Below are positions 9,411 to 57,042 of a stretch of 64,000 nucleotides of DNA, in pieces. Position 1 is the first letter of the stretch. Each line of letters opens with the position of its first letter. The DNA is taken from IMG/VR virus record IMGVR_UViG_3300023174_000040, positions 62,001 to 126,000 of that record, one strand, 5' to 3'. Under the pieces are notes generated by a model that had not been told where the DNA came from, made no database searches, and saw only the letters and a program-made list of their open reading frames with translations. Position numbers and translations under genes: made by a program.

Positions 9411-9689
9411 ATGGCTCGTCCTAAGAAGTATGTTCGTGGTCGTCGTGCTGGTAAGAAGAGTGTTGATATGGAAACGTTCCTCACTACGGTTGCCAAGGTG
9501 GCTGCTGCTGGTGGTACGCAGTCGGAAGTTGCCGATAAACTCGGTCTGACCGCTGGTGCTGTCAGCCTGCGTTGCAAGGCTCTCCGTGATCGTGGTGTCA
9601 AGGTTCCGAAGTTCACCAAGGCTGGTACTGTCGGTCGCCGTATTGACGTTGCCGCCTGTAATGCTATTCTGGCCGCTGCGGCTGGTTGA
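9411..9689 (+). CDS. small basic helix-turn-helix DNA-binding protein
   Basis: GTQSEVADKLGLTAGAVSLRCKALR HTH pattern; aagagg RBS; paralog of 12547..12816. Confidence 0.75.
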   Translation: MARPKKYVRGRRAGKKSVDMETFLTTVAKVAAAGGTQSEVADKLGLTAGAVSLRCKALRDRGVKVPKFTKAGTVGRRIDVAACNAILAAAAG

Positions 9690-9696
9690 TCGTTAC

Positions 9697-9759
9697 AGCA
9701 GAGGTGGGGAGCCTGCAACAAGGTGGTTGTGGAACAGGTTCAATTCCTGTTATCTGCTT
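9697..9759 (+). ncRNA. compact tRNA-like element
   Basis: AGCAGA/TCTGCT closing stem, AACAGG-TTCAATT-CCTGTT T-arm and GCAAC/GTTGT hairpin; no canonical D-arm or anticodon loop. Confidence 0.35.
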
Positions 9760-9792
9760 AAGACCCGCCCTAAATTGATTAGGGCGGGTCTT
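9760..9792 (+). terminator. intrinsic terminator hairpin
   Basis: aagacccgccctaa / ttagggcgggtctt inverted repeat followed by atctttt. Confidence 0.7.
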
Positions 9793-9815
9793 ATCTTTTA
9801 ATAAATCGAGATTTT

Positions 9816-10265
9816 ATGCTTAGTGATAAAATAAAAGTATTTCAAAATTGTGCAGGAATTAATTTCGCAAAAGACGGGTATTTATCCCCGGCTCTTATCG
9901 CTGAATATACAGATTCTGAAATCAATGTATATTCAGCAGATTTTAATTCGCCTGATGATAAAGAAAAATTTGCCGACTTTATCAGATATCAGATAATTGA
10001 AAAACAACTTGTTGAGTATCTTTTTGTTGCTGAATCTTGGATGAGTCTTTATGAAAAAGATGGATCTTTTGTTAAAAAGATAGAAGCAATAACAATGACT
10101 CACTGCAGCAAGTTTCTTCCATATGAAACAGGCTATTATTCGGAAATAGAAAGATTTTCCGAAGATACTGCTATTCTTAAAGAATGGGTTGAATTTGGTA
10201 AAACATATGGTAGTGAAGGTAATTTTTCTAATTTATTTCTTAAATGTTCTCACGAATGGAATTGA
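9816..10265 (+). CDS. hypothetical protein
   Basis: 149-aa ORF co-oriented with its neighbours. Confidence 0.7.
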   Translation: MLSDKIKVFQNCAGINFAKDGYLSPALIAEYTDSEINVYSADFNSPDDKEKFADFIRYQIIEKQLVEYLFVAESWMSLYEKDGSFVKKIEAITMTHCSKFLPYETGYYSEIERFSEDTAILKEWVEFGKTYGSEGNFSNLFLKCSHEWN

Positions 10266-10282
10266 ATAATAAAGGAATCATA

Positions 10283-11368
10283 ATGTCTGTGATCGAATCT
10301 GCCAATCTGTATTATAAAGAAGGCGCCAGTGACAAAGTTTATCACGCTACCATTGAAGATATTAGCAATGGGTATGTTGTGAATTTTAGTTATGGACGTA
10401 GGGGAAGTGCCTTGAAAACAGGTAGTAAAACCCAAAGTCCAACTACTCTCGAAGATGCCAAGACTATTTTTAATAATCTTGTAAAAGAAAAAACGAGCAA
10501 GGGATATAGGTTTGTTGAAAATGCCAATCCCTCTGAAATTCCTGTTGTGAGTGATGATCTGCCTGATACTCCCAATGAGATACAGTGCGTTCTCTTAAAT
10601 CCAATTAGTCAAGATGAAGCTGAAAAGCTTATTAATGATGATAATTGGGCTCTCCAGCACAAACTTGATGGTGTCCGGTTTATGCTGGGCAAGGAAAAGG
10701 ATCAGTCTCCCCACGGAATTAATCGTAAAGGCAAAAGGATCAGCATTCCTACTGTGATTTGGAATGTTGTCACTAAGTTTGATGATAATTTCTTAGTTGA
10801 TGGTGAACTAATTGGTGAGACTTTGCACGTTTTTGACATTCTCGAATATCGTAGCGAATGTCTCAGGAAGAAAAGTTTGATTGAGAGGATGAAATATCTC
10901 AAGACTTTGTTTAAGTACATTGAATCTGAGAATATTATTCATACTCCTCTTTATCTTGAAAAGAAAGAAAAGCGTGAGGTTTATGACAGTTTGCTTAAAG
11001 AAAACAAAGAAGGAGTTGTCTTTAAGCATATTGATGCTCACTATAATATTGGTCGCCCTGCAAGTGGCGGAAACTATTTGAAGTACAAGTTCTATAGCAC
11101 TTGTAGTTGCGTGGTAACTGATATTAATAAAAAGCGTAGTGCCGCTATTGGTCTTTATAAGGGAAAGAAACTTGTGAAGGCTGGTAACGTAACCATTCCT
11201 GTTAATTTCGATGTGCCGAATGTGGGCGAAATCGTAGAGGTAAAATACCTCTACGCCAGAAAGCAATCTGGTTCTCTGTATCAACCTATTTATTTGGGTG
11301 TTAGGAATGACATCTCAAAAGAAGAGTGCCAGCAAACACAATTAAAGTTTAAAGCAGAAGAAGAATGA
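10283..11368 (+). CDS. lig: WGR-domain ATP-dependent DNA ligase
   Basis: N-terminal WGR-like SDKVY...FSYGRRG; adenylation motif QHKLDGVR, VDGE, FDIL, EGVVFK, LKYKF; OB fold with EVKYL and YLGVRND. Confidence 0.9.
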   Translation: MSVIESANLYYKEGASDKVYHATIEDISNGYVVNFSYGRRGSALKTGSKTQSPTTLEDAKTIFNNLVKEKTSKGYRFVENANPSEIPVVSDDLPDTPNEIQCVLLNPISQDEAEKLINDDNWALQHKLDGVRFMLGKEKDQSPHGINRKGKRISIPTVIWNVVTKFDDNFLVDGELIGETLHVFDILEYRSECLRKKSLIERMKYLKTLFKYIESENIIHTPLYLEKKEKREVYDSLLKENKEGVVFKHIDAHYNIGRPASGGNYLKYKFYSTCSCVVTDINKKRSAAIGLYKGKKLVKAGNVTIPVNFDVPNVGEIVEVKYLYARKQSGSLYQPIYLGVRNDISKEECQQTQLKFKAEEE

Positions 11369-11591: not shown

Positions 11592-11610
11592 GTTTCTTTT
11601 TGGTACGTTG
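11592..11610 (+). promoter_or_regulatory. conserved 19-nt motif copy
   Basis: gtttctttttggtacgttg upstream of 11646. Confidence 0.6.
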
Positions 11611-11645
11611 AAGACTCGACCTCTCCACGGACGGAACTAATAATT

Positions 11646-12956: not shown

Positions 12957-12975
12957 GTTTCTTTTTGGTACGGTT
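12957..12975 (+). promoter_or_regulatory. conserved 19-nt motif copy
   Basis: gtttctttttggtacggtt upstream of ATG 13003. Confidence 0.65.
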
Positions 12976-13002
12976 GTCCCCTGTCCCGACAAAGAGGAAA
13001 AA

Positions 13003-14141: not shown

Positions 14142-14160
14142 GTTTCTTTTTGGTACGGTA
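14142..14160 (+). promoter_or_regulatory. conserved 19-nt motif copy
   Basis: gtttctttttggtacggta upstream of 14211. Confidence 0.65.
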
Positions 14161-14210
14161 GAGTGTTGTCAGCGACGGACAAATAAAATTTTTACAAGGA
14201 GATCCATAAT

Positions 14211-16408: not shown

Positions 16409-16750
16409 GTGATCAAAGAAATATGGACAATCATTTGTGGTGGAAGAAGCTTTGATAAGAACGATGAATTTTTTCAAACTAAACATACTTTTAGACTTGA
16501 AAAATATAAAGATAAAATCGAATGTGATATATTTAAGAACTACTACAAGGTCAAAGAAAATTTAATGTCCTTGATGAAGGAATTGAATGTCTTGGAGGAT
16601 AGGATCAACGACAAATATCCGCTGATGCTGTGTGCGGGCATAAGCCCGAAAGGTTCCTTCCGGTACGGTATGACACCAGAGCAGGTGGACGAGGAAAACG
16701 AAAAGATTCTGAAAGAATTGATCTTTTATATTAACTCTAAGAAATCATGA
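16409..16750 (+). CDS. hypothetical protein resembling the rIIA C-terminus
   Basis: LNVLEDRINDKYPLM...KELIFYINSK vs rIIA MNKLENEINSKYPLL...NDLVFYINNK. Confidence 0.65.
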   Translation: MIKEIWTIICGGRSFDKNDEFFQTKHTFRLEKYKDKIECDIFKNYYKVKENLMSLMKELNVLEDRINDKYPLMLCAGISPKGSFRYGMTPEQVDEENEKILKELIFYINSKKS

Positions 16751-20929: not shown

Positions 20930-20948
20930 CTTTCCCTCCGGTACGGTT
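20930..20948 (+). promoter_or_regulatory. conserved 19-nt motif copy
   Basis: ctttccctccggtacggtt upstream of 20968. Confidence 0.65.
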
Positions 20949-20967
20949 CCTGTTCAGGAGAGAAGCC

Positions 20968-21507
20968 GTGCAAATTCTAGAAAACTATAAATTCAAATCA
21001 AAGTCTAGCGAAGTCTTTGTTAAAGACTATTCATTTAATAAATTCGTGAAAGACTTCCCTGAATTCTCTGATTTACTACTCAGAATGAAAACTCATCTGA
21101 AAAATAATCATAAATATTATCTTGTGGATCTAATCATTAAAGACCACAAGAAAAATCAAAAGACTTGTGTCGATGTTCGCTATCATGTTGATGGTGAATA
21201 TGAAAGCAATAATCAATATTGTCTTTGGGTTAGTGGGCCAAATAGAACTTTGTTCCCTAAAGAACAATTTAATTTAGAGAGTTTTCCAAGTTCAAGAAAC
21301 GACCAGAATAATTTTTTGGAATTGTTCCTCAAAGATAAGGAATCTTTCGAAGTGCCAGAGGAAACTTTTGTTGTATACTCCAGCAAAGATCCCCATAAAG
21401 GTGTGGTTTGCGAAAAGGATGGCCGACGAATCTTTGTGCGTTTAATGGCAACAGATTACATAAAGCCAAAGAATTTCATCAAGAAGGGTTTCTCTCAGGT
21501 ACGGTAG
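20968..21507 (+). CDS. putative 2OG-Fe(II) oxygenase-fold protein
   Basis: HVDG (HxD), distal H in DPHKG, and RIFVR. Confidence 0.5.
   Translation: MQILENYKFKSKSSEVFVKDYSFNKFVKDFPEFSDLLLRMKTHLKNNHKYYLVDLIIKDHKKNQKTCVDVRYHVDGEYESNNQYCLWVSGPNRTLFPKEQFNLESFPSSRNDQNNFLELFLKDKESFEVPEETFVVYSSKDPHKGVVCEKDGRRIFVRLMATDYIKPKNFIKKGFSQVR
21488..21506 (+). promoter_or_regulatory. conserved 19-nt motif copy
   Basis: gtttctctcaggtacggta followed by a gtctct/agagac hairpin; upstream of 21547. Confidence 0.6.
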
Positions 21508-27213: not shown

Positions 27214-27603
27214 ATGATTAAGTTTCTTAGTTTTGTTTCTTGTTTAGTGGTTTGTGCTGGATCGTATGCCGGCCAGACCAGTATTGATAGCACCGATACA
27301 TCAGTTTCGGTTCTCAGGACCGATAGCATTGCCCCTGCTGCAACAACTGCCGCCCCAGTTGCTATCGCTAATTGCTGCAACACTTGCAATAGTTGTAATG
27401 ATGGTTGCATCAACAACTGTGATAGTTGCTGCAAGAAGCGTGAAAGGGCTTTCAGCCGCTCCCGCACTCATACTGAGAATGTAACCTGCCAGAACTGCCA
27501 GCAGGTTAAAGAGGAGACGGATACCGTTGAGACTAGTCGCAAGCGACTCAATGGTAGTGTAATCAAGAGAAGTCGTAGCCGTACTTCCGTTTCGGTACGG
27601 TAA
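27214..27603 (+). CDS. secreted Cys-rich, basic low-complexity protein
   Basis: aaggag RBS, signal peptide MIKFLSFVSCLVVCAGSYA, CCNTCNSC repeats, RSR-rich tail. Confidence 0.75.
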   Translation: MIKFLSFVSCLVVCAGSYAGQTSIDSTDTSVSVLRTDSIAPAATTAAPVAIANCCNTCNSCNDGCINNCDSCCKKRERAFSRSRTHTENVTCQNCQQVKEETDTVETSRKRLNGSVIKRSRSRTSVSVR

Positions 27604-28541: not shown

Positions 28542-28818
28542 GGCCCAGTAGCTCAATTGGATAAGAGCAACAGCCTTCGTGAAATAGGAGTGCTTAAAGA
28601 GAAATCTTTAATGTAGAATCGCTTAAATTCGGTGAAGGCTTAACTGCTAATACCGAGCCAAGCCTAAGCAATTAGGAAGGTGTAGAGACTTAACAGGCGA
28701 CACCTAAAGTTGAAAGACAATGGTGAAGATAAAGTCCAGACCACAAACAGTAATGGTAGTGAAAACTATAGTGGTACCGCTAAGCTGTAGGTTCCAAGTT
28801 CGATCCTTGGCTGGGTCA
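28542..28818 (+). tRNA. tRNA-Arg(UCU) interrupted by a group I intron
   Basis: Exons 28542-28577 and 28780-28818 join into a cloverleaf (GGCCCAG/CTGGGTC, ACAGC-CTTCTAA-GCTGT, TTCGATC loop). Confidence 0.9.
28578..28779 (+). ncRNA. group I self-splicing intron (202 nt, no ORF)
   Basis: Core motifs aaattcggtgaa, aataccgagcc, gtagagact, aaagtcc; terminal G; P1 CTTC/GGAG with a U-G wobble at U28577. Confidence 0.9.
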
Positions 28819-36399: not shown

Positions 36400-36400
36400 A

Positions 36401-37772: not shown

Positions 37773-37991
37773 ATGAATTTCATATCAACATTTATTCAGA
37801 GTTTCATAGTATCGGTAGCATTTTTTGTGTTATTTATTTCAACTATAGGTCCAATAATTGCTAAAACTTTTAATTGGCACGGAGATGATCCTACTGCCTT
37901 ATTTGGACCAGAATGGATTTGGAACTGGGGTTTCTTTTTAACTATAGTTTTGTTCTTTATTGTAGCCTTATTTATTGAAAGGTCGAGGTAA
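37773..37991 (+). CDS. small two-helix membrane protein
   Basis: Two hydrophobic segments. Confidence 0.6.
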   Translation: MNFISTFIQSFIVSVAFFVLFISTIGPIIAKTFNWHGDDPTALFGPEWIWNWGFFLTIVLFFIVALFIERSR

Positions 37992-38233
37992 ACCATGCCA
38001 AAGTGTATTATCGGACCAAATGGAGTAGCACATGGCTTAATGTGCAAAGATGGCAAATTATGTGGACAAAAAGGAAATATTCTACAAAGTTATTTAAAAG
38101 ATTCTAAGACAAAATCAGATCTACTCCTTATAGGTCCAATGTCATATGTTTCAAAAAAACCTTTATGGCCAATTTTGTGAATTCGCTATTTTACAAAAAA
38201 AGAAGATATTCAAAAATTAGTGGAGTAAAAAAC

Positions 38234-39193
38234 ATGATAACAATATTTGATGACAATAGAAATTTTTATCCTTATGAATTAATGAACTTCCCAGAAGGTG
38301 AAAGTTTTGTTAAACTAAATATTAATTCAAAAAACCCTGTAAATATACTTTGGAAGTATGAGAATGACCAAGAATTATTTGTTTTGGGTTTAATTATTGA
38401 TGTTATTTGTCACGATGGGGGTGTACTTAAAAATCTTTATATTCCTTATTTTCCTCACGCAAGACAAGATAGAAACACATCAAAAAATCAACCTTTTTCA
38501 CTAAGAGTATTTGTTGGATGTTTGAAGGAAATTCTTTTTGGCTACCTTACGAATGGGCCGTATCTGGAAAAAATAAAAATTCATAGTTTAGATATTCACT
38601 CTGGCGTTTTGAGTTCTCTAATTAACAATAATCCTTACTTAGTATGGCTATCAAACCCAGAGTTATTTAAATCATTAGATTCTTGTGAATTAATTCAGCA
38701 TTTTAATTTTAGCCATATAAATTGTATAATTTGCCCAGATAAAGGAGCGAAAGATAGATCAACACAATGGGCAGATAAATTAAACTTGCCAATTTTATAT
38801 TGCGAAAAAACAAGAGATCCAAGTACTGGTAGATTAAGTGATCCTGTTATTGTTAATATGGAAAATTTAAGGTCTGAATGGGCATACCTTCTAGTTGATG
38901 ATATTGGCACAGGATTTGGAACTCATATTCAATTGGCTAATTTTATTAAATCTAAAATTAATGTTCCAATAGAAATTTTTGTTTCTCATGCTGGATTTTC
39001 TAATGGAATCGAACCAGTATTAAATGTTTTTGATAGAATTTATACAACAAACAGTCTGGTCAAGGGACACAACAAAATATTAGACTTGCAAAGACAAAAC
39101 AACCCGCTACAATGGGGGAGTATATTTGTTGTTGATGTTGAAAAAATCTTTGAAAAACAAATGCAAGAGCGGCGAGGAGCAGACCATGAATAA
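38234..39193 (+). CDS. prs: ribose-phosphate pyrophosphokinase-like protein (candidate Adps)
   Basis: NFPEGES, IPYFPHARQDR, LDIHS, CPDKGA, KTRD, LLVDDIGTGFGT, VSHAGF. Confidence 0.9.
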   Translation: MITIFDDNRNFYPYELMNFPEGESFVKLNINSKNPVNILWKYENDQELFVLGLIIDVICHDGGVLKNLYIPYFPHARQDRNTSKNQPFSLRVFVGCLKEILFGYLTNGPYLEKIKIHSLDIHSGVLSSLINNNPYLVWLSNPELFKSLDSCELIQHFNFSHINCIICPDKGAKDRSTQWADKLNLPILYCEKTRDPSTGRLSDPVIVNMENLRSEWAYLLVDDIGTGFGTHIQLANFIKSKINVPIEIFVSHAGFSNGIEPVLNVFDRIYTTNSLVKGHNKILDLQRQNNPLQWGSIFVVDVEKIFEKQMQERRGADHE

Positions 39194-39644
39194 AACCGAC
39201 AACGAGCCGTCTCCTGGTTCTCACGGGTGGTATCGCATTGTCGTCGATAGTCAAACAGGCAAAGTCATCAGGCGAGAAGACTGCGGCGATTCTCCGCTAA
39301 AGGTTGAACGTGAAGCAAACGACGATGACGACAAATCGCACACGCTGATAGCGTCCGCTGTGGTTTCTCTTGTCGCCTCTCTTGTTACTTCGGCGTGTTT
39401 TATTTCTTGCCAACGGCAGGACGTTGACGGCCGACTTCATCCGGCTCTCTTGAAACTGACGGACCAACAGAACGACCTAAACATCCATGACATCCAGTTG
39501 GAGCGGCTGTGGAGCAATATTGTTCTCACCACAATCTCGGCCGCTTTGTCCCGTAGACCTCAAGCCAAGACGAAATCAAGCGTCTGCGACTTACCCACTT
39601 GGAGCGGCAGGTGCCTGATATTAGCCAAACTTATAAATTATTAA
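39186..39644 (+). CDS. hypothetical protein on a GC-rich patch
   Basis: MNKTDNEPSPGSHG start; about 53% GC in a sampled 60-nt line. Confidence 0.5.
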   Translation: MNKTDNEPSPGSHGWYRIVVDSQTGKVIRREDCGDSPLKVEREANDDDDKSHTLIASAVVSLVASLVTSACFISCQRQDVDGRLHPALLKLTDQQNDLNIHDIQLERLWSNIVLTTISAALSRRPQAKTKSSVCDLPTWSGRCLILAKLINY

Positions 39645-39877
39645 ATATTGCTCTTGAGAAAAGCTTAATAATTAGAGATTGTCGGCAGGTTTTCTGCGAT
39701 GAAAAATTGTATAATGAAATTTATGATATAATACAACACACTACTACCATTGACACACTAGATCAAATGGCAGATGAAGTGCATTGTTTGGCAAATAACG
39801 GTTATATTGATGATGATGCGGAGCGTTTTTTGATAATGAAAATTAGTGATCAAAAAATTTCACTTTCTAATACTTAA
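39599..39877 (+). CDS. hypothetical protein
   Basis: ORF track. Confidence 0.55.
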   Translation: MERQVPDISQTYKLLNIALEKSLIIRDCRQVFCDEKLYNEIYDIIQHTTTIDTLDQMADEVHCLANNGYIDDDAERFLIMKISDQKISLSNT

Positions 39878-39895
39878 AACAAAAAGGAGTTATAA

Positions 39896-41521
39896 ATGAA
39901 CACTTTGCCAATTTTACTCAGCGACAGTTACAAACAATTTCATTGGATGATGTATCCAAAAGGAATTACTAAATTGTATAGTAATATGACCCCAAGAAAT
40001 TTTAAGCACCTTAAAACAGATCGTGCATTATTTTTTGGGCTGCAATATTATATTAAGGAATACCTTATCACACAATGGAACGAAAACTTTTTCAAAAAAC
40101 CAAAAGAAGAAGTTGTTAAAGAATTTAAAAGATTTCATAAACATTTTAGTAACTATGATATGCCAACAGAGCATATTGAAAAATTGCATGATTTAGGCTA
40201 TATGCCAATTCTTATCAAAGCATTACCAGAAGGTAGTCTTGTTGAAGAAAAAGTGCCATTTTTTACTATCACAAACACCCACCCAGACTTTGCTTGGTTG
40301 GTTAACTTTCTTGAAACTCAAATGAGTACAAGTATTTGGGATTTTTGTGTTGTAGCAACCATTGCTTATGAATATCGTAAAATATTAAATAAATGGGCAA
40401 ATAAAACTTGCGATAATAGAAATTTTGTTCAATGGCAAGGTCATGATTTCGCACAACGAGGAAGAAGTAGCCAAGAAAGCACACTAAACCAAGCAGGACA
40501 TTTGCTTAGTTTTACCGGCACTGATACCATTCCCAGTGTTTTAATGCTGGAAAAATATTATAATGCCAATATGGAAAAAGAGTTAATCGCAAGTAGTGTC
40601 CCGGCTACAGAACACAGCATTATGACTAGTTATGGAAAAGAAAATGAAATTGATGCTTTTGAAAGAATCTTGGATCAATTTCCAACTGGTATTGTGAGCA
40701 TAGTTAGCGACAGTTTTGATCTGTGGCAAGTATGCACTAGTTTTTGTACTCAACTTAAGGATAAAATCTTAAGCAGAGATGGAAAAATGGTCATCAGACC
40801 TGACAGTGGAGATCCTGCTGATATCGTGTGCGGATTAAATATACTTAAATTTGATAATTTTAAAAAAGCCGAAGAATGTTTTCATTTTCATATAGATAAT
40901 GGTAAAAATCTGTTTATAGTTGATGACAAGTGCTACAAGGTTAAAATTCATTCTGGTAGTGAGTTTATCTACGAGCCATATAATCTAAACCCTTCGGAAA
41001 AGGGAGTTGTAGAACTTCTTTGGGACGTTTTCGGTGGTACAATTAACAGTAAGGGATATAAGGAACTAGATTCTCATATCGGAGTAATCTACGGCGATAG
41101 CATTAGCCGAGAAAGAGCAGAAGATATTTGCTCTAGGCTAGAAAAGAAAGGTTTCGCTAGTAATAATATCGTTTTTGGCATAGGAAGTTACACATATAAT
41201 TATAACACTAGAGATAGTCTTGGTATTGCTGTTAAAAGCACCTATTGCGAAGTAGATGGTATTCCTAGGGAGATTTTCAAAGACCCTGTAACGGATGACG
41301 GCGTTAAAAAGAGTGCAAGAGGATTACTGAAAATAGACTCAAATGAAAATAGAGACTATATTCTTAAAGATTGTGTTTCTAAAGAAGAAGAAACTCAAGG
41401 TTATTTGAAGCCAGTGTTTTCTGACGGCAAACTTTTAGTAGATGATGAATTGAGTGTCATTAGAACAAGAATAAACCATGCAGAACTCTGGCTCTGTCCA
41501 GCGATTAAAGATGAACAATGA
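39896..41521 (+). CDS. nadV: nicotinamide phosphoribosyltransferase-family protein (candidate Namat)
   Basis: LLSDSYKQFH, FFGLQY, HDFAQRG, FTGTDT, VPATEHS, SIVSDSFD, VIRPDSGDP, IYGDSI, FGIGS, KDPVTDDGVKKSARG. Confidence 0.95.
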   Translation: MNTLPILLSDSYKQFHWMMYPKGITKLYSNMTPRNFKHLKTDRALFFGLQYYIKEYLITQWNENFFKKPKEEVVKEFKRFHKHFSNYDMPTEHIEKLHDLGYMPILIKALPEGSLVEEKVPFFTITNTHPDFAWLVNFLETQMSTSIWDFCVVATIAYEYRKILNKWANKTCDNRNFVQWQGHDFAQRGRSSQESTLNQAGHLLSFTGTDTIPSVLMLEKYYNANMEKELIASSVPATEHSIMTSYGKENEIDAFERILDQFPTGIVSIVSDSFDLWQVCTSFCTQLKDKILSRDGKMVIRPDSGDPADIVCGLNILKFDNFKKAEECFHFHIDNGKNLFIVDDKCYKVKIHSGSEFIYEPYNLNPSEKGVVELLWDVFGGTINSKGYKELDSHIGVIYGDSISRERAEDICSRLEKKGFASNNIVFGIGSYTYNYNTRDSLGIAVKSTYCEVDGIPREIFKDPVTDDGVKKSARGLLKIDSNENRDYILKDCVSKEEETQGYLKPVFSDGKLLVDDELSVIRTRINHAELWLCPAIKDEQ

Positions 41522-41564
41522 AATTTGGCAACGATATTTAAAAAAAGAAAGAGAAAGATTTTAG

Positions 41565-41750
41565 ATGAATGAGGAAGAAGCCTGGGGCTGGGCATATAAT
41601 AATCCAACTCTTAGCAAGCTAATAAGAGAAGCCGAAGACTTTTGCGAAGAATTACGTAAGCCTTTAGACTACACAAAAATAAAAATCAGTACAGATTACG
41701 GAAGAAAGGTAGTTATGTATTATGAAGAAGAGGAAGAAAATGAAATATAA
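41565..41750 (+). CDS. hypothetical protein, paralog of 31309..31494
   Basis: REAEDFCEEL...TDYG. Confidence 0.7.
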   Translation: MNEEEAWGWAYNNPTLSKLIREAEDFCEELRKPLDYTKIKISTDYGRKVVMYYEEEEENEI

Positions 41751-42216
41751 AATTTGTAAACTAATGGGCTGGGATGGCAGTGAGTGGTATCAAGTTAAGA
41801 AAAAAGGTTGGTTATTTTGGAATTGGGTTGGGAAATGTGAAGGCCCAATAGAATTGCCGTTATTTGTTGAGTTAAAATTTTCTACTTTTGAAGACGCTGC
41901 GAAGTGGATAGAACAACATGAAAAATTGATTAATAATAGAAAACCAAAAATATTAGAAGAAGTTACATATAATGAATCAGTTGAACAGGCAAGTCGTTTA
42001 GGCTATATCAACAATCATAAATATGGAACGGAAAAAGTGGAAAAAGATTTTGCAGACACAGAGACTCTGATACTGCTGGAATTAGTTCAATTAAAAATTG
42101 CCGTAAGGTCTTTGCTGGATGATGTTAACGAAAGATACCCAGATAAAAATCCAAGAGAATGGACTTGCAAACATATGCAATTACTGGATGACTTAATACA
42201 GAAGGACGTTGTGTAA
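41740..42216 (+). CDS. hypothetical protein, N-terminal half paralogous to 31830..32072
   Basis: KYKICK...WYQVKKKGWLFW. Confidence 0.65.
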   Translation: MKYKICKLMGWDGSEWYQVKKKGWLFWNWVGKCEGPIELPLFVELKFSTFEDAAKWIEQHEKLINNRKPKILEEVTYNESVEQASRLGYINNHKYGTEKVEKDFADTETLILLELVQLKIAVRSLLDDVNERYPDKNPREWTCKHMQLLDDLIQKDVV

Positions 42217-42493
42217 GAAAGGCCAACAACAGATGAAAATTCCTCATTCAAGAACAAGAGAGCAAATTATAATTTCAATGTGTTTTACTTATCGCCATGA
42301 TTATGGTCTTGCTAAAAGTCCCGGTGTTAGTGGAATGATTAGTGGCGGAATGACCGAAGAACAAAGAAAACTTTTGTATAATCAAATGGCTCAAATATTT
42401 GATAATGATATTGCTCCATATGTAGACTTGAAATGTTTTGGTGAAAATATTCCATGTTCAACTAAAAAATTTCGTGATCAACCATTTCACTAG
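42209..42493 (+). CDS. hypothetical protein
   Basis: MCFTYRHDYGL...LYNQMAQIFDNDIAP. Confidence 0.65.
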   Translation: MCKKGQQQMKIPHSRTREQIIISMCFTYRHDYGLAKSPGVSGMISGGMTEEQRKLLYNQMAQIFDNDIAPYVDLKCFGENIPCSTKKFRDQPFH

Positions 42494-42519
42494 TTCCAAA
42501 ATGATATGTGGAGAAAACA

Positions 42520-42822
42520 ATGAACACACTAATTAATGTGCTAGGAGGTATCAATATTATTCTAGCCGTCATGAGTTTTTTGCCATGTTTAATGGGAGGA
42601 CTAATGATATTTGATGCTCCTGGCTCAACAGAAAAAATATCGAATCATATAGTATCATTTTTGTTTTTAAGTTTTCCAGTAGTTTGTTTAGTTTGTGGAA
42701 TAATGTCTTTGTTTGTTAATAATAAATACCCCATTTATTTTGCACTATTTCCTATAGTTGAAGGAACAACATTCGTTTCAATATTGTATTTAATTTCATG
42801 GCAACGGAAAAGAATTAAGTGA
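42520..42822 (+). CDS. three-helix membrane protein
   Basis: Hydrophobic; FDAPGS motif. Confidence 0.7.
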   Translation: MNTLINVLGGINIILAVMSFLPCLMGGLMIFDAPGSTEKISNHIVSFLFLSFPVVCLVCGIMSLFVNNKYPIYFALFPIVEGTTFVSILYLISWQRKRIK

Positions 42823-42859
42823 AATAATAGGCCTAAACACATTACTTTAGAGGAATAAC

Positions 42860-43780
42860 ATGGATGAAAAAATCAAAATCACCACAGAAGGTAAATCTGT
42901 AGTTGCTACTCATAAAAATAAAGTTATTCGCAAATGGGATACTTTTTTCTACTTTAGCACAAAACTAGTGCTTCAATCACTTTCTCGGCCTTGGCATGAA
43001 AAGCAATTAACTGAAGAAGAATTTAAATCTAAAAATCCTCTCTTTTCTTTTGTTAAAAAAGATGTTTTATCAAAAGTATATCGTGCCTACTTAATAAAAA
43101 ATAATTACAGTTCTTTTAAAGAAGAATATGGAATAACCGCCTCTACCGCTAGAAAAATCATAAATTCAAAAATGAAGGAGATTTGGGTTGTAGACCCATA
43201 TCTTTTTACAAAGTTTTGTTTTAATTTAAAAAGAAAACCAAGCGCCGATAAAGTTCATAGACTCAGTGAGACAGTAGATCTATTAAAGCAAGTTAAAATA
43301 AAAAATCATTTACCTTTGGTTTTTTATTTTGGAGTCAAAGAATCCGAACTACCTTCTTTATTTGGTGAAGATTCTTGGAAAGAAATTTCCAAAAACAGTG
43401 AGTATAGAAACCATGTTTTGTGCAAAAGAGTTTGTAATATTTCTGCTGACTCTTTTTTGCCGCAAAATAGGTTAGAGTATGCTAAAAGATTCAAAGAATT
43501 TAACAAAATAAAAAAAACCGGTGCCCTAGAAAAATTTTATTACGAAAGCAATTTTGAATTGATTTATATTGTTTGTAACATATTTAAAATAAAAGAAATA
43601 AAAGATATCTGTAGTTCAAAATGCTTTGGTTTGCCTCTATGGGGTCAAGTTAACTCTAGTGATCACTATAATTTATTTGTATGTATAAAAGATTTCCTAG
43701 ATCTAGCTAAGAAGCATAAATATAAATACGATATCAATTGGACGAGAGAACAATGGGAAAAAACATTAAAAACCTCATAG
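42860..43780 (+). CDS. hypothetical protein
   Basis: 306-aa ORF with gagga RBS. Confidence 0.75.
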   Translation: MDEKIKITTEGKSVVATHKNKVIRKWDTFFYFSTKLVLQSLSRPWHEKQLTEEEFKSKNPLFSFVKKDVLSKVYRAYLIKNNYSSFKEEYGITASTARKIINSKMKEIWVVDPYLFTKFCFNLKRKPSADKVHRLSETVDLLKQVKIKNHLPLVFYFGVKESELPSLFGEDSWKEISKNSEYRNHVLCKRVCNISADSFLPQNRLEYAKRFKEFNKIKKTGALEKFYYESNFELIYIVCNIFKIKEIKDICSSKCFGLPLWGQVNSSDHYNLFVCIKDFLDLAKKHKYKYDINWTREQWEKTLKTS

Positions 43781-43782
43781 AT

Positions 43783-43895
43783 GTGGCCAAAATAACGGCC
43801 AAAGTGAATTTTCCCGCTCGGTACATTTATGGTAATTTTAAGCCAAAATACTAGAAAATTTCCCGCTCGGGAAAGTGGCCAAAATAACGGCCAAA
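43783..43895. repeat. intergenic direct-repeat cluster
   Basis: Perfect 21-nt gtggccaaaataacggccaaa at 43783-43803 and 43875-43895 flanking two tttcccgctcgg copies, one of which forms the hairpin tttcccg-ctc-gggaaa. Confidence 0.85.
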
Positions 43896-43916
43896 TAATG
43901 GAGCTTGGAACAAAAA

Positions 43917-44219
43917 ATGAGTGACGTTCCTGAATTAGACCGTTTAATCGAAGAAAACGAAAATTTTCGATGCAATATGAAATGGCGTCGAAGAGACAGA
44001 TCTTCTAAACTCTTTATGTTATTCATGATTTTACTTTTTCCAGTATATTTTTTTAATATTTTTATTTTTGGTGTAGAAGTTGCATCGATATTAATGGTTG
44101 TACTTTTTATTTTATCTCTTTCGCCATTAATTTACGAATGTTCACTTGATATATTTGAAGGTCTTCTTAAAGATAGTTATAAAAATATGGACATGACTAA
44201 AAAGTATAATAGAAAGTGA
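43917..44219 (+). CDS. two-helix membrane protein
   Basis: ORF 43905..44219. Confidence 0.65.
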   Translation: MSDVPELDRLIEENENFRCNMKWRRRDRSSKLFMLFMILLFPVYFFNIFIFGVEVASILMVVLFILSLSPLIYECSLDIFEGLLKDSYKNMDMTKKYNRK

Positions 44220-44760: not shown

Positions 44761-45645
44761 GTGAAAATGACTAGTTACTCAGAAAAATATCACCAGTTCA
44801 TCTCAAACGTTACTTATGAGGATGTTGATTGTTTCATTAAAAATGGAACTATGATTAATGGGGAAAAGCCCAACAATATTCAAAAGATAGCTTTGTTTTC
44901 AATTATTAAGACAGAACCATATTATGCTTACTGCTATGCTAGGGATGTAATTAAAGACCGGTGGATTGAAGTTGAAGAAATCATAAAGAATAGCCGTCCA
45001 GAATATATCCATCATTATGCCAAAGATGTTATCAAGGGACGGTGGATTGAGTGCGAAGAGATTATCAAGAGTGATCCCCAGTATGCTTATCTTTATTCCA
45101 GAGATGTAATTAAAAATCGTTGGAATGAAGCAGAAGAGATTATTAAGACTGACCCATATTATGCCTATCTCTATGCTAGAGATATAATTAAAGATCGCTG
45201 GATTGAAGCAGAAAAAATTATTAAAACTAGTCCTGCATATGTTTACTATTACACCAAAGATGTCCTAAAAGATAGATGGATTGAAGCTGAGAGAGTTCTA
45301 ATCCACTATATGTATCTTTACGCCAAAGATATAATTAAAGGCAGATGGATCGAATCAGAAGGGATTATTAAAACTGATCCACGATATGCCTATTATTATG
45401 CTAGAGACGTAATCGAAGGTCGCTGGGTTGACGCAGAAGAAACCATAAAAACTAGTCCAGAGTATGCCTGTGGTTACGCTAAAGATGTAATTAAAGGAAG
45501 ATGGATTGAAGCAGAAGAAGTCATCAAGACTAGTCCAGAATTTCTTTATCAATATGCAGTCGAAGTAATCAAAGGAAGATTATCAGAAGAACTTGAAAGT
45601 GTTTTTGAAACACTCGAGTTTCCTTCCGGTACGGTTGGAGAGTAG
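44761..45645 (+). CDS. tandem-repeat (about 25-aa) helical solenoid protein
   Basis: About 9 copies of P.YAY.YARDVIKGRW.EAE.IIK. Confidence 0.85.
   Translation: MKMTSYSEKYHQFISNVTYEDVDCFIKNGTMINGEKPNNIQKIALFSIIKTEPYYAYCYARDVIKDRWIEVEEIIKNSRPEYIHHYAKDVIKGRWIECEEIIKSDPQYAYLYSRDVIKNRWNEAEEIIKTDPYYAYLYARDIIKDRWIEAEKIIKTSPAYVYYYTKDVLKDRWIEAERVLIHYMYLYAKDIIKGRWIESEGIIKTDPRYAYYYARDVIEGRWVDAEETIKTSPEYACGYAKDVIKGRWIEAEEVIKTSPEFLYQYAVEVIKGRLSEELESVFETLEFPSGTVGE
45618..45636 (+). promoter_or_regulatory. conserved 19-nt motif copy
   Basis: gtttccttccggtacggtt upstream of 45679. Confidence 0.65.
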
Positions 45646-45951: not shown

Positions 45952-45970
45952 GTTTCCTTCCGGTACGGTT
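45952..45970 (+). promoter_or_regulatory. conserved 19-nt motif copy upstream of the Tas-like operon
   Basis: gtttccttccggtacggtt upstream of ATG 46005. Confidence 0.65.
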
Positions 45971-46004
45971 GAGAGTAGTCTCCATAAAACAAAAGAAACA
46001 AAAC

Positions 46005-50891: not shown

Positions 50892-50910
50892 GTTTCCCTC
50901 CGGTACGGTT
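50892..50910 (+). promoter_or_regulatory. conserved 19-nt motif copy
   Basis: gtttccctccggtacggtt just downstream of the array. Confidence 0.65.
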
Positions 50911-51024
50911 GGAGGGAACTTTGTGAGCGTGACTTGGGGCTGCCTCTCCTAAATCTATAGTCCGTAAAAAGTGTAAAAATAATCAGTGCAGAATAACCCA
51001 CAAACACTCAAAGGAGAAATTAAA

Positions 51025-51381: not shown

Positions 51382-51466
51382 GCTGAAGTGGCGAAACTGG
51401 CGAAACGCAGGGGACTTAAAATCCCCCACATTAGAAACACTGCGGGTTCGAATCCCGCCTTCAGCA
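51382..51466 (+). tRNA. tRNA-Leu(UAA)
   Basis: GCTGAAG/CTTCAGC acceptor, GGGGA-CTTAAAA-TCCCC anticodon arm, long variable arm, TTCGAAT loop. Confidence 0.95.
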
Positions 51467-51482
51467 CTGTAAATAAAAACAA

Positions 51483-51842
51483 GGGGGCGTAAAGGTATCG
51501 ACTGGATAAAAAGATTTATAACTGCATGTCGAGGTTAGTCGAACGGCCTCGTTAAAATTCGACTAAAGCCTTAACTGGCACTGTTAATTACGCAATGGCT
51601 GCCTGATAAAAAGGGCAACCACGAATCTAGGAAGCTAATGTTGGATGCGTCCTAAAATTCGTCGTCAAATCCAACTGGTTTTCTGGTGGTCAACTTACCT
51701 GAAAACGAGAAAATAGGTTGAGAGATTTTAAAGACTTTTGTTTATTGTAATCTTTAAAATCTATTTGAACAATAAACCAAACATGTGAAGAAGTTATATT
51801 TTGATTTATTTCAGGACAGGAGTTCGACTCTCCTCGCCTCCA
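51483..51842 (+). ncRNA. ssrA: tmRNA; tag (A)GTVNYAMAA*
   Basis: 5' GGGGGCG pairs with 3' CGCCTCC-A, G-U at position 3, T-arm caggag-ttcgact-ctcct; tag ORF ggc act gtt aat tac gca atg gct gcc tga. Confidence 0.92.
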
Positions 51843-51867
51843 TTTATAATTTCAACTAAAGGAAAAC

Positions 51868-55083: not shown

Positions 55084-55091
55084 AGGATAAT

Positions 55092-55361
55092 ATGAAAAAA
55101 TATAAAAGTATTGAAGTTCACGAAGATACATTTTGCGATATCTGTGGGAACTCATGCAAAGATAAATTGGGTAACTATGAAAGTGCATCCCTAAGTGCAG
55201 ATTGGGGATATTCTAGTGGTAAAGATGGAACCAGATATGACATTGATCTATGCGAAAAATGTTTTGATGAAACAATAGAGTTCTTGAAAAGCAAGACATC
55301 TCCATCTTTGCCATTAGATCCCCTTCCCCTGAAGGGTCACGACGCCCACAATGGATTCTAA
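55092..55361 (+). CDS. zinc-binding hypothetical protein
   Basis: CDICG...DLCEKCF. Confidence 0.7.
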   Translation: MKKYKSIEVHEDTFCDICGNSCKDKLGNYESASLSADWGYSSGKDGTRYDIDLCEKCFDETIEFLKSKTSPSLPLDPLPLKGHDAHNGF

Positions 55362-55746
55362 TATGCTCAATAAAGAAGCTGCACTTAATAGTTTTGTAGA
55401 AGTCAAGAAGATTCACCTTGATGTTTTACTTTGGGAAAGTAAGCCAAAGAGGCCGAGCGAAAAACTTTCTAAAACATTTGCTTTTGTGAGAATATTTATA
55501 AATGATTCTCTTGTTCACAAGTATGGACCAAAAGAACAATATCTAATGGAGAGAATCGGTGGAGAAGAAGAACAACGTTTATCATACATAGATGATTGTA
55601 AAGAATACCTGATAAAAGTTGGTTTTATAGATCCAAGATTCAGTGCAATTCAACATCTAACCCTCGATAATGACTTTTGCGAATGGAAAAATATACCTTT
55701 TTCTTCTAACATTAATGAAGTTAAACTAAAGAGGGAATTGGTTTAA
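55351..55746 (+). CDS. hypothetical protein
   Basis: ORF track. Confidence 0.65.
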   Translation: MDSNMLNKEAALNSFVEVKKIHLDVLLWESKPKRPSEKLSKTFAFVRIFINDSLVHKYGPKEQYLMERIGGEEEQRLSYIDDCKEYLIKVGFIDPRFSAIQHLTLDNDFCEWKNIPFSSNINEVKLKRELV

Positions 55747-55786
55747 ATATTTGATATGAAGATCTAAAAATCAAGACCACCAGAAT

Positions 55787-56116
55787 ATGAACGATATGCT
55801 AAAAGAAAAAATAAGTGAAAAGCCAGTCAGGATGATTGAAAAGGCTTGCTATTTCAATCAAATGAGGTCAGATGGAGACACTTGGCGTATTCATGGCGTT
55901 GTGGATGGAACGGAATTGATGCCTAGTCGCCCAATCGGTTTCGATAAAGATAAAAATATATTCGAAACCAAGAACACAATTTACAAGGTTGTTTCTTGGG
56001 GTACTATGACCAAGTGCATTGACGAAGAATTCTGGAAGCAAGTAGAAGCTGATATTAAAGAGATTAGGCAGCGACTTAATAGCTACCACAATTTAAAAAG
56101 GTTCAGTCTTGATTAA
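55787..56116 (+). CDS. hypothetical phage protein
   Basis: IFETKNTIYKV motif. Confidence 0.65.
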   Translation: MNDMLKEKISEKPVRMIEKACYFNQMRSDGDTWRIHGVVDGTELMPSRPIGFDKDKNIFETKNTIYKVVSWGTMTKCIDEEFWKQVEADIKEIRQRLNSYHNLKRFSLD

Positions 56117-56762
56117 GATTATCAAAGAAATTGTTTCAAAAGAAACTCATTGCTATGTTGCCGTAAGCATGGGTGTCGATAGCGTATCTTCTTTATTTTG
56201 GTTGAGAAGCAAGGGATACAACATTACTCCATTGCACTTTAATCATAATCTAAGAGAACAGAACCATGCCATGGAAAATAAGTTCCATGAACTTTGTGGT
56301 AAATTAGGATTAAAAGGTATTGTGGGCAGAGGTGAAAACTTAAAAACAGAAAAAGATTGCAGAGATGCCCGCTTAAATTTTTATAAAGAGGTTGTGGATT
56401 ACGAAGGTTATGTAATCACTGCTCATCATCTCAATGATTATGTGGAAAGCTATTTAATTAATTGTTTTCGTGGACAACCCAATCACAATCCTTTTGAATT
56501 AATTAGCGAGTTCGATGGATTCAAGATCATCCATCCTTTTCTATTAAGTAAGAAAAAAGATTTTCAAGAGTACGTTGACAGGAATAAATGGAACTGCTAT
56601 ACTGTGGAGGACGAAACCAATAAGGTTGTCAAAGGAAGCAGAAGAAATTGGATTCGTCAAATAATCATTCCAGAAATGAAAAAACAAAAGTTAAGTCTAG
56701 AAAAATATTGTTCAAGGAGAATTGAAAAGAACTTGAAGAATAAGACGGTAATTCTAGACTAG
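56109..56762 (+). CDS. tilS: tRNA(Ile)-lysidine synthetase, catalytic domain only
   Basis: VAVSMGVDS (PP-loop), HFNHNLR, RDARLNF, ITAHHLNDYVESYL, HPFL, EDETN, RNWIR. Confidence 0.9.
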   Translation: MIKIIKEIVSKETHCYVAVSMGVDSVSSLFWLRSKGYNITPLHFNHNLREQNHAMENKFHELCGKLGLKGIVGRGENLKTEKDCRDARLNFYKEVVDYEGYVITAHHLNDYVESYLINCFRGQPNHNPFELISEFDGFKIIHPFLLSKKKDFQEYVDRNKWNCYTVEDETNKVVKGSRRNWIRQIIIPEMKKQKLSLEKYCSRRIEKNLKNKTVILD

Positions 56763-56778
56763 CACAGTTGGTTAATTT

Positions 56779-57042
56779 CCGAAGGTAGCAAAACGGTTAA
56801 TGCAACAAACTCATGAATTTTCGTGCCATACGATTGGAAACTTCGTATGGGATGTCGTCAAATTCGGTGAAACCTAAATGCGTGAGCATATGGCAATGCC
56901 GAGCGAAGCCCGTAAGGGAACGTGTAGAGACTTAACGGCGACCACCTAAATCGTAAGATATGGTGAAGACAAAGTCCAAGGAGTGGTGAAAATCACACAA
57001 ACTTGAATTTGTAGACTGTGGGTTCGAATCCCACCCTTCGGA
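56779..57042 (+). tRNA. tRNA(CAU), probably Ile2, interrupted by a group I intron
   Basis: Exons 56779-56814 and 57006-57042 give CCGAAGG/CCTTCGG-A and ACAAA-CTCATAA-TTTGT; lies 16 nt after tilS. Confidence 0.88.
56815..57005 (+). ncRNA. group I self-splicing intron (191 nt, no ORF)
   Basis: aaattcggtgaa, caatgccgagc, gtagagact, aaagtcc; terminal G; P1 CATGAA/TTCGTG with a U-G wobble at the 5' splice site. Confidence 0.9.

What the first reader, a model, noticed from the sequence alone, without database searches (positions are those of the whole stretch)
9411..57042. Two codon regimes matched to the phage tRNA set (AGA, TTA, ATA)
Seen: the 9411..9689 gene has no AGA, TTA or ATA codons when read in full. 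The sampled start of rIIA also lacks them, and the Tas-like gene favours CGT/CTT/AAG. The AT-rich gene blocks use these three codons heavily. The window encodes tRNA-Arg(UCU), tRNA-Leu(UAA) and a probable tRNA-Ile2 with TilS, which decode exactly these codons. Inference: motif-driven early genes are adapted to a GC-richer host, and the others depend on phage tRNAs.
Basis: partly seen in the sequence, partly recalled or inferred. Interest (0 to 1): 0.6.

Follow-up and report, generated by a model that had tools for sequence, protein, structure and literature searches.

The report
Promoter-linked codon split matching phage tRNAs
A 323-kb lake phage writes the genes behind one phage-specific promoter-like motif almost without the codons ATA, TTA, AAA and AGA, uses those codons heavily elsewhere, and carries its own tRNAs for them: a clean new example of the pattern long known from phage T4.

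Summary
The window is positions 62001-126000 of a 323-kb lake-metagenome phage contig. Genes starting within 1 kb downstream of a 20-nt motif (aGTTTCYYTYYGGTACGGT; core 13 times, all + strand, 0.25 expected) use AGA+TTA+ATA for 12% of Arg+Leu+Ile codons, against 41% in other genes. This survives control for GC3, A3 and GC12 (odds ratio 0.29, p about 5e-12), GC3 matching (14% vs 39%) and a circular-shift control. It replicates in 60 kb of the same contig outside the window (20% vs 39%).

The split is not a GC shift. Only A-ending codons fall, T-ending ones rise, and C/T two-fold codons are unchanged. ATA, TTA, AAA and AGA are the four most depleted codons.

The phage encodes tRNA-Arg(UCU), tRNA-Leu(UAA), tRNA(CAU) next to a TilS catalytic domain, and, outside the window, tRNA-Lys(UUU). 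Several tRNA genes directly follow the motif. The Arg and CAU tRNA genes carry group I introns.

"Early" timing and a "GC-richer host" could not be tested: no RNA data exist and the host is unknown. The closest precedent is T4, whose tRNA set also contains UCU, UAA and CAU. Verdict: new member of a known kind, moderate interest.

The parts
9327..9346 (+). promoter-like motif (core GGTACGGT at 9337), 66 nt before the HTH gene
   Evidence: core occurs 13 times, all + strand, 0.25 expected
11592..11611 (+). motif variant (GGTACGTT) before the GP88-family gene
12957..12976 (+). motif before 13003-13116 and 13118-14131
14142..14161 (+). motif 51 nt before rIIA
16652..16671 (+). motif before the rIIB-like gene
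20930..20949 (+). motif before 20968-21507
21488..21507 (+). motif before 21547-23072 (three low-NNA genes)
27584..27603 (+). motif heading the unit that runs into tRNA-Arg(UCU) and the next tRNA
45618..45637 (+). motif before 45679-45939
45952..45971 (+). motif before 46005-46367 and the Tas gene
50892..50911 (+). motif heading the unit with tRNA-Leu(UAA) and tmRNA
58710..58729 (+). motif before 58768-59040
61459..61510 (+). two motif copies (cores at 61469 and 61501) before 61531-63119
9411..9689 (+). HTH regulator, A-ending-codon-poor regime (0/17 target codons)
10283..11368 (+). WGR + ATP-dependent ligase-like gene, 5/70 target codons
13118..14131 (+). unknown gene, 10/72 target codons
14211..16397 (+). 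rIIA, 2/139 target codons
16747..18072 (+). rIIB-like / PcfJ-like gene, 5/82 target codons
21547..23072 (+). three genes (one ligase-domain), 14/91 target codons
27920..28487 (+). two small genes upstream of tRNA-Arg, 2/35 target codons
45679..47490 (+). four genes including TIGR-Tas endonuclease (46402-47328), 2/101 target codons
58768..59040 (+). small gene, 0/14 target codons
61976..63119 (+). two genes, 5/75 target codons
706..8389 (+). two giant genes (1009 and 1550 aa; S8 peptidase + CBM), A-ending-codon-rich regime (220/446 target codons)
30042..44219 (+). long block of about 37 genes with no motif (NT5C, PRPP synthetase-like, NAMPT and others). Most use target codons for 30-70% of Arg/Leu/Ile; lower outliers include 39186-39644 at 16%
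28542..28818 (+). tRNA-Arg(UCU): exons 28542-28577 and 28780-28818
28578..28779 (+). group I intron (202 nt) between anticodon positions 34 and 35. The 5' exon ends in U and the intron ends in G
51382..51467 (+). tRNA-Leu(UAA)
51483..51845 (+). tmRNA, tag GTVNYAMAA
56109..56762 (+). TilS catalytic (PP-loop) domain protein, 217 aa; ATA 1/17 but AGA 7/12 and TTA 9/18
56779..57042 (+). tRNA(CAU), probable tRNA-Ile2: exons 56779-56814 and 57006-57042
56815..57005 (+). group I intron (191 nt) after anticodon position 36

Best explanation
The phage has two translational classes of genes, coupled to its own tRNA supply.

Class 1 is about a quarter of the genes. They sit directly behind a 20-nt phage-specific promoter-like motif and include regulators, rIIA/rIIB, ligases, AAA ATPases and Tas. 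They avoid A-ending codons read by U34-type or lysidine tRNAs, above all ATA, TTA, AAA and AGA, so they can be translated well by the host tRNA pool alone.

The same motif also sits directly in front of phage tRNA genes. The first transcription wave would therefore make both class 1 proteins and the phage tRNAs: Arg-UCU, Leu-UAA, Lys-UUU, and Ile2-CAU once it is modified by the phage TilS.

Class 2 is the remaining genes (metabolic, modification and putative virion genes). They follow the AT-rich mutational drift of the genome and use those codons for 35-55% of the relevant residues. Their efficient translation depends on the phage tRNAs.

Shown: the codon split, its link to the motif, the tRNA and TilS genes, and motif-tRNA adjacency. 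Inferred: that the motif is an early promoter, that the host is poor in these tRNAs, and that the tRNAs are functional after splicing.
For: - Codon split: 112/931 vs 1086/2665 target codons. Adjusted OR 0.29, quasi-F p 5e-12. GC3-matched 14% vs 39%.
- Codon ranking: ATA, TTA, AAA and AGA are the four most depleted of 59 codons.
- The shift is A3-specific, with no change at C/T two-fold sites, and is strongly uneven among A-ending codons (Q 141).
- Replication outside the window: 19.8% vs 38.7%, p 2e-7. Codon log-odds correlate with rho 0.76.
- Depletion fades with distance from the motif. Circular-shift control: 0 of 2520 shifts reach the observed value.
- A diverged relative with its own motif variant shows the same direction (24.7% vs 31.5%, p 0.045).
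- tRNAs. tRNA-Lys(ttt), predicted from the AAA depletion, was found at L046:5692-5765.
- In L046, tRNA-Lys starts 12 nt after the motif, tRNA-Ser abuts it, and tRNA-Glu abuts a variant.
- TilS passes the curated cutoff. It is the only one of 25 non-motif genes with at least 12 Ile codons that has 6% ATA or less (1/17, binomial p 0.002).
- Class 1 functions are non-structural. A putative virion protein uses the target codons at 52%, with AAA 57/64.
Against: - No expression data exist, so 'early' and 'promoter' are inferences.
- The host is unknown, so scarcity of these tRNAs in the host is untested.
- AGA alone is weak after adjustment.
- Five motif-proximal genes are not depleted: 11646-12398, 20968-21507, 27694-27933, 51025-51369 and 61531-61971, at 25-35%.
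- Seven depleted genes lie more than 1 kb from a motif.
- The CAU tRNA and TilS have no motif nearby; the nearest upstream is 5.9 kb away.
- GAA is not depleted although a tRNA-Glu(UUC) exists.
- CCA, GGA and TCA are depleted, but no matching tRNA has yet been seen. Roughly half of the genome was inspected.
- The class thresholds (200 nt, 1 kb) were set after seeing the gene table.
Confidence: 0.55

Rival explanations
1. Expression level, not timing. The motif is simply the strongest promoter, and its genes are under ordinary translational selection for codons read by abundant host tRNAs throughout infection. The phage tRNAs are an unrelated general supplement for an AT-rich genome.
For: The bias looks like classical translational selection: CGT, GGT, CTT, ATC and TTC are favoured. 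The motif is long and highly conserved. There are no timing data.
Against: Putative virion proteins, normally among the most abundant phage products, are in the A-ending-codon-rich class. The tRNA genes sit behind the same motif. TilS avoids only ATA.
Confidence: 0.2
2. Defence-driven variant. The host, or its anticodon nucleases triggered by infection, depletes particular tRNAs (Lys-UUU, Arg, Leu and others). First-wave genes avoid the vulnerable codons, and the phage tRNAs replace the cleaved ones.
For: tRNA-Lys(UUU) is the classic nuclease target (established knowledge, not tested here). The contig encodes a T4 Rnl1-type RNA ligase (PF09511). [quoted passage not shown] The window also holds a tmRNA and TIGR-Tas.
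Against: Nothing here shows nuclease resistance of the phage tRNAs. The depleted codon set is the generic A-ending set that T4 also supplements, not a specific nuclease target list.
Confidence: 0.15
3. Mosaic origin. Class 1 genes were acquired from a GC-richer donor and have not yet drifted to the phage's AT-rich composition.
For: Class 1 genes have somewhat higher GC3 (0.305 vs 0.232). Some genes, such as 39186-39644 and 9411-9689, are above 50% GC.
Against: T3 rises and C/T two-fold sites are unchanged. The effect persists at matched GC3. It is strongly codon-specific. rIIA/rIIB are phage-core genes. All class 1 genes share one phage-specific motif, and the pattern recurs in a diverged relative.
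Confidence: 0.05
4. Transcription-associated mutation bias on heavily transcribed DNA produces the A-poor third positions.
For: The coding strand of class 1 shows T much greater than A at third positions.
Against: No matching excess of G over C (0.171 vs 0.176). Log-odds range from -1.9 (ATA) to -0.09 (GAA) among A-ending codons (Q 141), which a uniform mutational bias cannot give.
Confidence: 0.03

Closest known systems
Bacteriophage T4: codon usage classes tied to time of expression and to the eight T4 tRNAs (Cowe & Sharp 1991; Kunisawa 1992, as listed in PMC3152331)
   Same: T4 carries tRNAs with anticodons tct, taa and cat (annotated Ile), plus tgt, tga, tgg, tcc and ttg. All read A-ending codons. 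The codons depleted here in class 1 (ATA, TTA, AGA, CAA, CCA, GGA, TCA, ACA) are the codons read by those eight T4 tRNAs. The idea that codon classes follow expression time is the same.
   Different: Here the class boundary is marked by a 20-nt phage-specific motif that also abuts tRNA genes. AAA/tRNA-Lys(UUU) is part of the set. Two of the tRNA genes are split by group I introns. The phage brings its own TilS, whereas T4 relies on the host enzyme (established knowledge, not tested here). Timing is not measured here.
Shigella phage Sf14 and other tRNA-rich phages (PMC12482277; PMC5683454)
   Same: Computational evidence that phage tRNAs serve late/structural genes, and that early and late genes differ in codon bias.
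   Different: Those studies used known hosts and gene timing. Here neither is known, but the split is sharper and tied to a sequence motif.
Phage-encoded TilS of Pseudomonas jumbo phage PA5oct and of 630-640 kb uncultured huge phages
   Same: Short TilS-like proteins of similar length, 29-33% identical over about 95% of the protein.
   Different: Here the gene lies immediately upstream of an intron-bearing tRNA(CAU) and itself avoids ATA.
Bacterial group I introns in tRNA anticodon loops (Azoarcus tRNA-Ile(CAU), cyanobacterial tRNA-Leu(UAA); reviewed in PMC3984707)
   Same: Small (191-202 nt) ORF-less group I introns in the anticodon loop. One sits in a CAU tRNA, as in Azoarcus. The 5' exon ends in U and the intron ends in G.
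   Different: The host gene is a phage tRNA. The 2014 review states that all phage group I introns known then were in protein-coding genes.

Membership tests
T4-type phage tRNA / codon-class compensation | Phage encodes tRNAs for codons that are over-used in phage genes | tested here: met
   ATA, TTA, AGA and AAA make up 40%, 35%, 55% and 77% of their families in class 2 genes. Matching tRNAs were found.
T4-type phage tRNA / codon-class compensation | Discrete gene classes differ in the use of exactly those codons | tested here: met
   Adjusted OR 0.29. The codons rank 1-4 of 59. Replicated outside the window.
T4-type phage tRNA / codon-class compensation | The classes correspond to time of expression | not testable with these tools
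   No RNA run holds this DNA. Only gene functions and the shared motif suggest 'early'.
T4-type phage tRNA / codon-class compensation | The codons are rare, or poorly served by tRNAs, in the host | not testable with these tools
   Host unknown. The TnpB scan of 185,579 species genomes gave no relative.
TilS (tRNA-Ile lysidine synthetase) | PP-loop catalytic N-domain scoring above the curated cutoff | tested here: met
   TIGR02432: 96.6 bits vs cutoff 93.6. PF01171: 2.9e-25.
TilS (tRNA-Ile lysidine synthetase) | Full-length architecture with C-terminal tRNA-binding domains | tested here: not met
   217 aa only. The full-length model NF007942 scores 43.8 bits vs cutoff 606. This is the same short form as in phage PA5oct.
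tRNA-Ile2 (CAU, lysidine-modified) | CAU anticodon without initiator features | tested here: met
   The spliced product folds as tRNA(cat). The anticodon stem ACAAA/TTTGT lacks the three G-C pairs of initiators.
tRNA-Ile2 (CAU, lysidine-modified) | Ile rather than elongator-Met identity | tested here: inconclusive
   Only context is available: the adjacent TilS and heavy ATA use. No isotype-specific model was on hand.
Group I intron (RF00028) | Full-length match above the gathering score, 5' exon ending in U and intron ending in G | tested here: met
   60.2 and 59.2 bits vs 50, model positions 1-253. Boundaries are read from the sequence and agree with ARAGORN.
Group I intron (RF00028) | Self-splicing activity | not testable with these tools
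   Needs in vitro transcription and a splicing assay.
rIIA | Profile match over most of the protein | tested here: met
   phrog_612 1.1e-75, residues 1-610. tblastn hits rIIA genes in 2913 phage records at under 34% identity.
TIGR-Tas | Tas endonuclease above the curated cutoff, with a nearby array of 36-nt units | tested here: met
   NF052498: 184.8 bits vs cutoff 100. 36-nt repeat arrays at 50176-50850 and 47756-47829.

The most novel reading that the evidence does not exclude
The intron-split tRNA genes and TilS form a staged 'translation licence'. The tRNAs are transcribed from the first-wave motif but become usable only after self-splicing. Ile2 additionally needs lysidine formation by a phage TilS. 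The TilS mRNA itself needs the phage Arg and Leu tRNAs but avoids ATA. The phage would then time its second wave of protein synthesis by tRNA maturation, not only by transcription. This would give group I introns in phage tRNA genes a regulatory role. They recur in at least three other jumbo-phage contigs, and a 2014 review (PMC3984707) lists none in phage tRNA genes.
Probability: 0.12. Interest if true: 0.8.

Novelty: new member of a known kind. Interest (0 to 1): 0.45.

Why it matters
This gives an unusually clean, sequence-only handle on how a large uncultured phage organises translation. A single 20-nt motif predicts which genes can be read with the host's tRNAs alone, and also marks the phage tRNA genes.

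The rule made a correct prediction: AAA depletion led to a tRNA-Lys(UUU) found elsewhere in the genome. It could be used to sort genes of uncultured jumbo phages into temporal or translational classes, and to predict missing tRNAs.

The intron-bearing tRNA genes with an adjacent TilS are the less expected part. They offer a testable system for tRNA maturation as a control point in infection.

Tried and rejected
- Megablast of 15 kb against GenBank phages found no match. tblastn of rIIA found only distant homologues, under 34% identity.
- Default ARAGORN found only tRNA-Leu, the tmRNA and a malformed call. Intron-aware runs were needed.
- Host search: scanning representative genomes with TnpB found no relative. 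Shine-Dalgarno frequency (about 42% of genes) and the Bacteroidota -7 promoter motif gave no clear host signal. The tmRNA tag resembles Bacteroidota-type tags only from memory, so I make no claim.
- My own terminator finder was too crude to bound transcription units. It missed the clear hairpin at about 9762-9795, so classes were defined by distance from the motif.
- The identities of the tRNA-like genes at 28877-29016 and 44394-44492 stay ambiguous, because splice boundaries cannot be fixed.
- The probable intron-bearing tRNA-Gln(UUG) of the near-identical relative was not found in the source contig by exact pattern.
- The major capsid gene was not located: two look-ups of flanking regions showed no head genes. 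The claim that late structural genes are class 2 rests on putative virion/baseplate-domain hits only.
- A rank test of 'A-ending codons with a known phage tRNA' against those without is only borderline (about p 0.05, my estimate), because GAA is not depleted and the tRNA inventory is incomplete.

Full report
**What the window is.** The window equals positions 62001-126000 of a 323,267-bp lake-metagenome phage contig: IMGVR_UViG_3300023174_000040, which is JGI Ga0214921_10000024. It has 34.8% GC, and its genes lie mostly on the + strand. GenBank phages hold no close relative. DNA of this phage occurs in freshwater metagenomes from 13 studies, none of them RNA.

I called 105 genes from ORF length, overlap and ribosome-binding sites, with manual fixes. 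Where the JGI gene calls were visible they agree, including the 92-aa gene at 9411-9689.

**RNA genes.** Default ARAGORN finds tRNA-Leu(UAA) at 51382-51467, a tmRNA at 51483-51845 and one malformed call. Rfam adds two group I introns (28567-28760 and 56805-56998, 60.2 and 59.2 bits against a cutoff of 50) and interrupted tRNA matches.

Reading the sequence, each intron lies in an anticodon loop, follows a U and ends in G:
- Exons 28542-28577 and 28780-28818 give loop CTTCTAA.
- Exons 56779-56814 and 57006-57042 give loop CTCATAA.

ARAGORN calls the spliced products tRNA-Arg(tct) and tRNA(cat), and its intron mode gives the same boundaries.

The gene ending 17 nt upstream of the CAU tRNA (56109-56762) passes the curated cutoff of the TilS catalytic-domain model (TIGR02432, 96.6 vs 93.6 bits). 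It lacks the C-terminal domains.

**The motif.** A direct-repeat search turned up aGTTTCYYTYYGGTACGGT. Its core GGTACGGT occurs 13 times in the window, always on the + strand, against 0.25 expected. One further variant brings the total to 14 sites. The sites lie 20-77 nt before start codons.

In IMG/VR only this contig and a near-identical relative carry many copies. Thirty-seven instances give a 20-nt consensus.

Outside the window, in locus L046, tRNA-Lys(UUU) starts 12 nt after the motif. tRNA-Ser abuts the motif, and tRNA-Glu(UUC) abuts a one-mismatch variant. Transcripts must therefore begin inside the motif. It behaves like the promoter of a phage-specific polymerase or factor, but this is an inference.

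**The codon split.** Genes that start within 1 kb downstream of a motif use AGA+TTA+ATA for 112 of 931 Arg+Leu+Ile codons (12%). All other genes use them for 1086 of 2665 (41%).

| Test | Result |
|---|---|
| Binomial model adjusted for GC3, A3 (both from other amino acids) and GC12 | OR 0.29; likelihood-ratio p 6e-29; overdispersion-corrected p 5e-12 |
| Only the first gene after each motif | OR 0.33-0.38 |
| Genes matched for GC3 (0.24-0.36) | 14% vs 39% |
| ATA alone, adjusted | OR 0.22 |
| TTA alone, adjusted | OR 0.25 |
| AGA alone, adjusted | OR 0.61, p 0.04-0.1 (weak) |
| Two-component mixture | modestly preferred (delta BIC 6); low component tied to the motif, OR 25, p 6e-9 |
| Target-codon fraction by distance from motif | 0.12 (<200 nt), 0.12 (200-1000), 0.33 (1-3 kb), 0.40 (>3 kb), 0.46 (no motif or other strand) |
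| Circular shifts of motif positions | 0 of 2520 reach the observed difference |

The distance thresholds were chosen after I had seen the gene table. The unsupervised mixture and the replicate below do not depend on that choice.

**It is not a GC effect.** Third-position A falls from 35.4% to 22.1% in the motif class, while T rises from 38.5% to 43.2%. C versus T at two-fold sites is unchanged (27.1% vs 25.0% C).

Among all 59 degenerate codons the most depleted are ATA (log odds -1.90), TTA (-1.69), AAA (-1.46) and AGA (-1.25). Next come CAA, CCA, CTA, TTT, GGA and TCA. GAA does not move. The 14 A-ending codons differ far more than a uniform bias allows (Q 141, p 1e-23).

The class avoids particular A-ending codons.

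**Prediction and replication.** AAA ranked third, and no Lys tRNA lies in the window. The motif-containing loci fetched from the rest of the contig then turned out to hold a tRNA-Lys(UUU).

In those 60 kb outside the window, automatic gene calls and the same 1-kb rule give:
- 19.8% vs 38.7% target codons (p 2e-7);
- AAA at 49% vs 72% of Lys codons;
- codon log-odds that correlate with the window's (rho 0.76).

A more distant phage (IMGVR_UViG_3300027741_000022) has the same tmRNA tag, an intron-bearing tRNA(CAU) and its own motif variant with core GGTACGCT. It shows the same direction more weakly (24.7% vs 31.5%, p 0.045).

The near-identical relative has a third intron-bearing tRNA. Under the same U/G splice rules it reads as Gln(UUG), although ARAGORN calls it tca. 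A tRNA-Thr(UGU) lies next to it. I did not find this gene in the source contig.

**Which genes are in which class.** Motif-class genes are regulators (HTH), rIIA and an rIIB-like gene, ligases, MoxR/RuvB-like AAA ATPases and the Tas endonuclease.

The other class holds:
- NAMPT, a PRPP-synthetase-like gene, a nucleotidase, methyltransferases, PfkB and GNAT genes;
- three giant proteins, one with virion/baseplate-type domain hits, which uses the target codons at 52% and AAA 57/64.

This argues against plain expression-level selection, but I did not locate the capsid gene.

TilS itself is class 2 for AGA (7/12) and TTA (9/18) but has ATA 1/17 (p 0.002). It is the only such gene among the 25 class 2 genes with at least 12 Ile codons. 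That fits an enzyme that must be made before ATA can be read well.

**Comparison with what is known.** T4 carries tRNAs tct, cat (Ile), taa, tgt, tga, tgg, tcc and ttg, which read the same kind of A-ending codons. Codon classes tied to expression time were described for T4 by Cowe & Sharp 1991 and Kunisawa 1992 (reference list of PMC3152331). Later work reached similar conclusions for other phages (PMC12482277, PMC5683454). tmRNAs and tRNA-modification genes are known in huge phages (PMC7162821), as is phage TilS.

The finding is therefore a new, unusually clean member of a known kind. The less expected element is the group I introns in phage tRNA genes. A 2014 review says all phage group I introns known then were in protein-coding genes (PMC3984707), and my searches found no later report. 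Yet related introns sit in tRNA genes of at least three other jumbo-phage contigs.

**Limits.** Timing, promoter function, host identity and tRNA function are all inferred. Roughly half of the genome was inspected. Several motif-proximal genes are not depleted, and several depleted genes lie far from a motif.

Noticed in passing
window 28578-28779 and 56815-57005; L070:5603-5899; L073:2468-2790 (-); L075:5524-5797 (-): Group I introns split phage tRNA genes: Arg-UCU and CAU here; CAU, Leu-UAA and a probable Gln-UUG in other IMG/VR jumbo-phage contigs. The two window introns share their catalytic core (76% mean column identity). A 2014 review states that no phage tRNA gene was then known to carry one.
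   Followed up: partly
window 28877-29016: tRNA gene (57.9 bits) with a roughly 70-nt insert in the anticodon loop that is not a group I intron by Rfam. The insert has its own hairpins, including a T-arm-like GGGTTCAATACCC. Identity is ambiguous: Asn-GUU by my reading and by ARAGORN on the relative, Asp by ARAGORN here.
   Followed up: partly
window 44394-44492 and 52080-52180: Two further tRNA-like sequences. One has a 31-38-nt insert at the anticodon arm (38.2 bits). The other is Tyr(GUA)-like with a long variable arm and an oversized D-loop (27.7 bits, just below the cutoff).
   Followed up: no
window 51483-51845: Phage tmRNA (139.6 bits) with tag GTVNYAMAA, 15 nt after tRNA-Leu(UAA). The same tag occurs in a diverged relative (L071:297-658).
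   Followed up: partly
window 46402-47328, 47756-47829 and 50176-50850: TIGR-Tas system: a Tas endonuclease (NF052498, 184.8 bits) and arrays of 36-nt units. Each unit has two conserved 10-nt blocks (GATTTTAACA and GAGTGAACCA) separated by variable 8-nt stretches. The Tas gene belongs to the motif-driven, A-ending-codon-poor class.
   Followed up: partly
window 56109-56762: The TilS gene uses AGA and TTA freely but ATA only once in 17 Ile codons (background 40%, p 0.002).
   Followed up: yes
L046:3625-9723 (contig 164716-175193): Ten motif copies within 6 kb, interleaved with very small genes and with tRNA-Lys(UUU), tRNA-Glu(UUC) and a tRNA-Ser with the unusual anticodon ACU.
   Followed up: partly
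window 60237-61403 (-): IS605-family TnpB (OrfB_IS605 5.7e-30, Cas12f1-like TNB domain) on the minus strand. It has its own codon usage (GC3 0.46, AGA 10/22, ATA 8/20). No close relative was found in 185,579 species genomes.
   Followed up: partly
window 38234-41521: PRPP-synthetase-like gene and NAMPT side by side, an NAD salvage pair of the kind linked to counter-defence in other phages (from memory, not tested).
   Followed up: no
window 44926-45580 and 62622-62772: 78-nt (26-codon) tandem repeats inside gene 44767-45645. Related 31-nt blocks occur in gene 62391-63119.
   Followed up: no
L066:5141-9991 and window 706-8389: Three consecutive giant genes (1616, 1009 and 1550 aa) with S8 peptidase, carbohydrate-binding, FGE-sulfatase and virion/baseplate-type domains. 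A T4 Rnl1-type RNA ligase lies just upstream (L066:1180-2235).
   Followed up: partly
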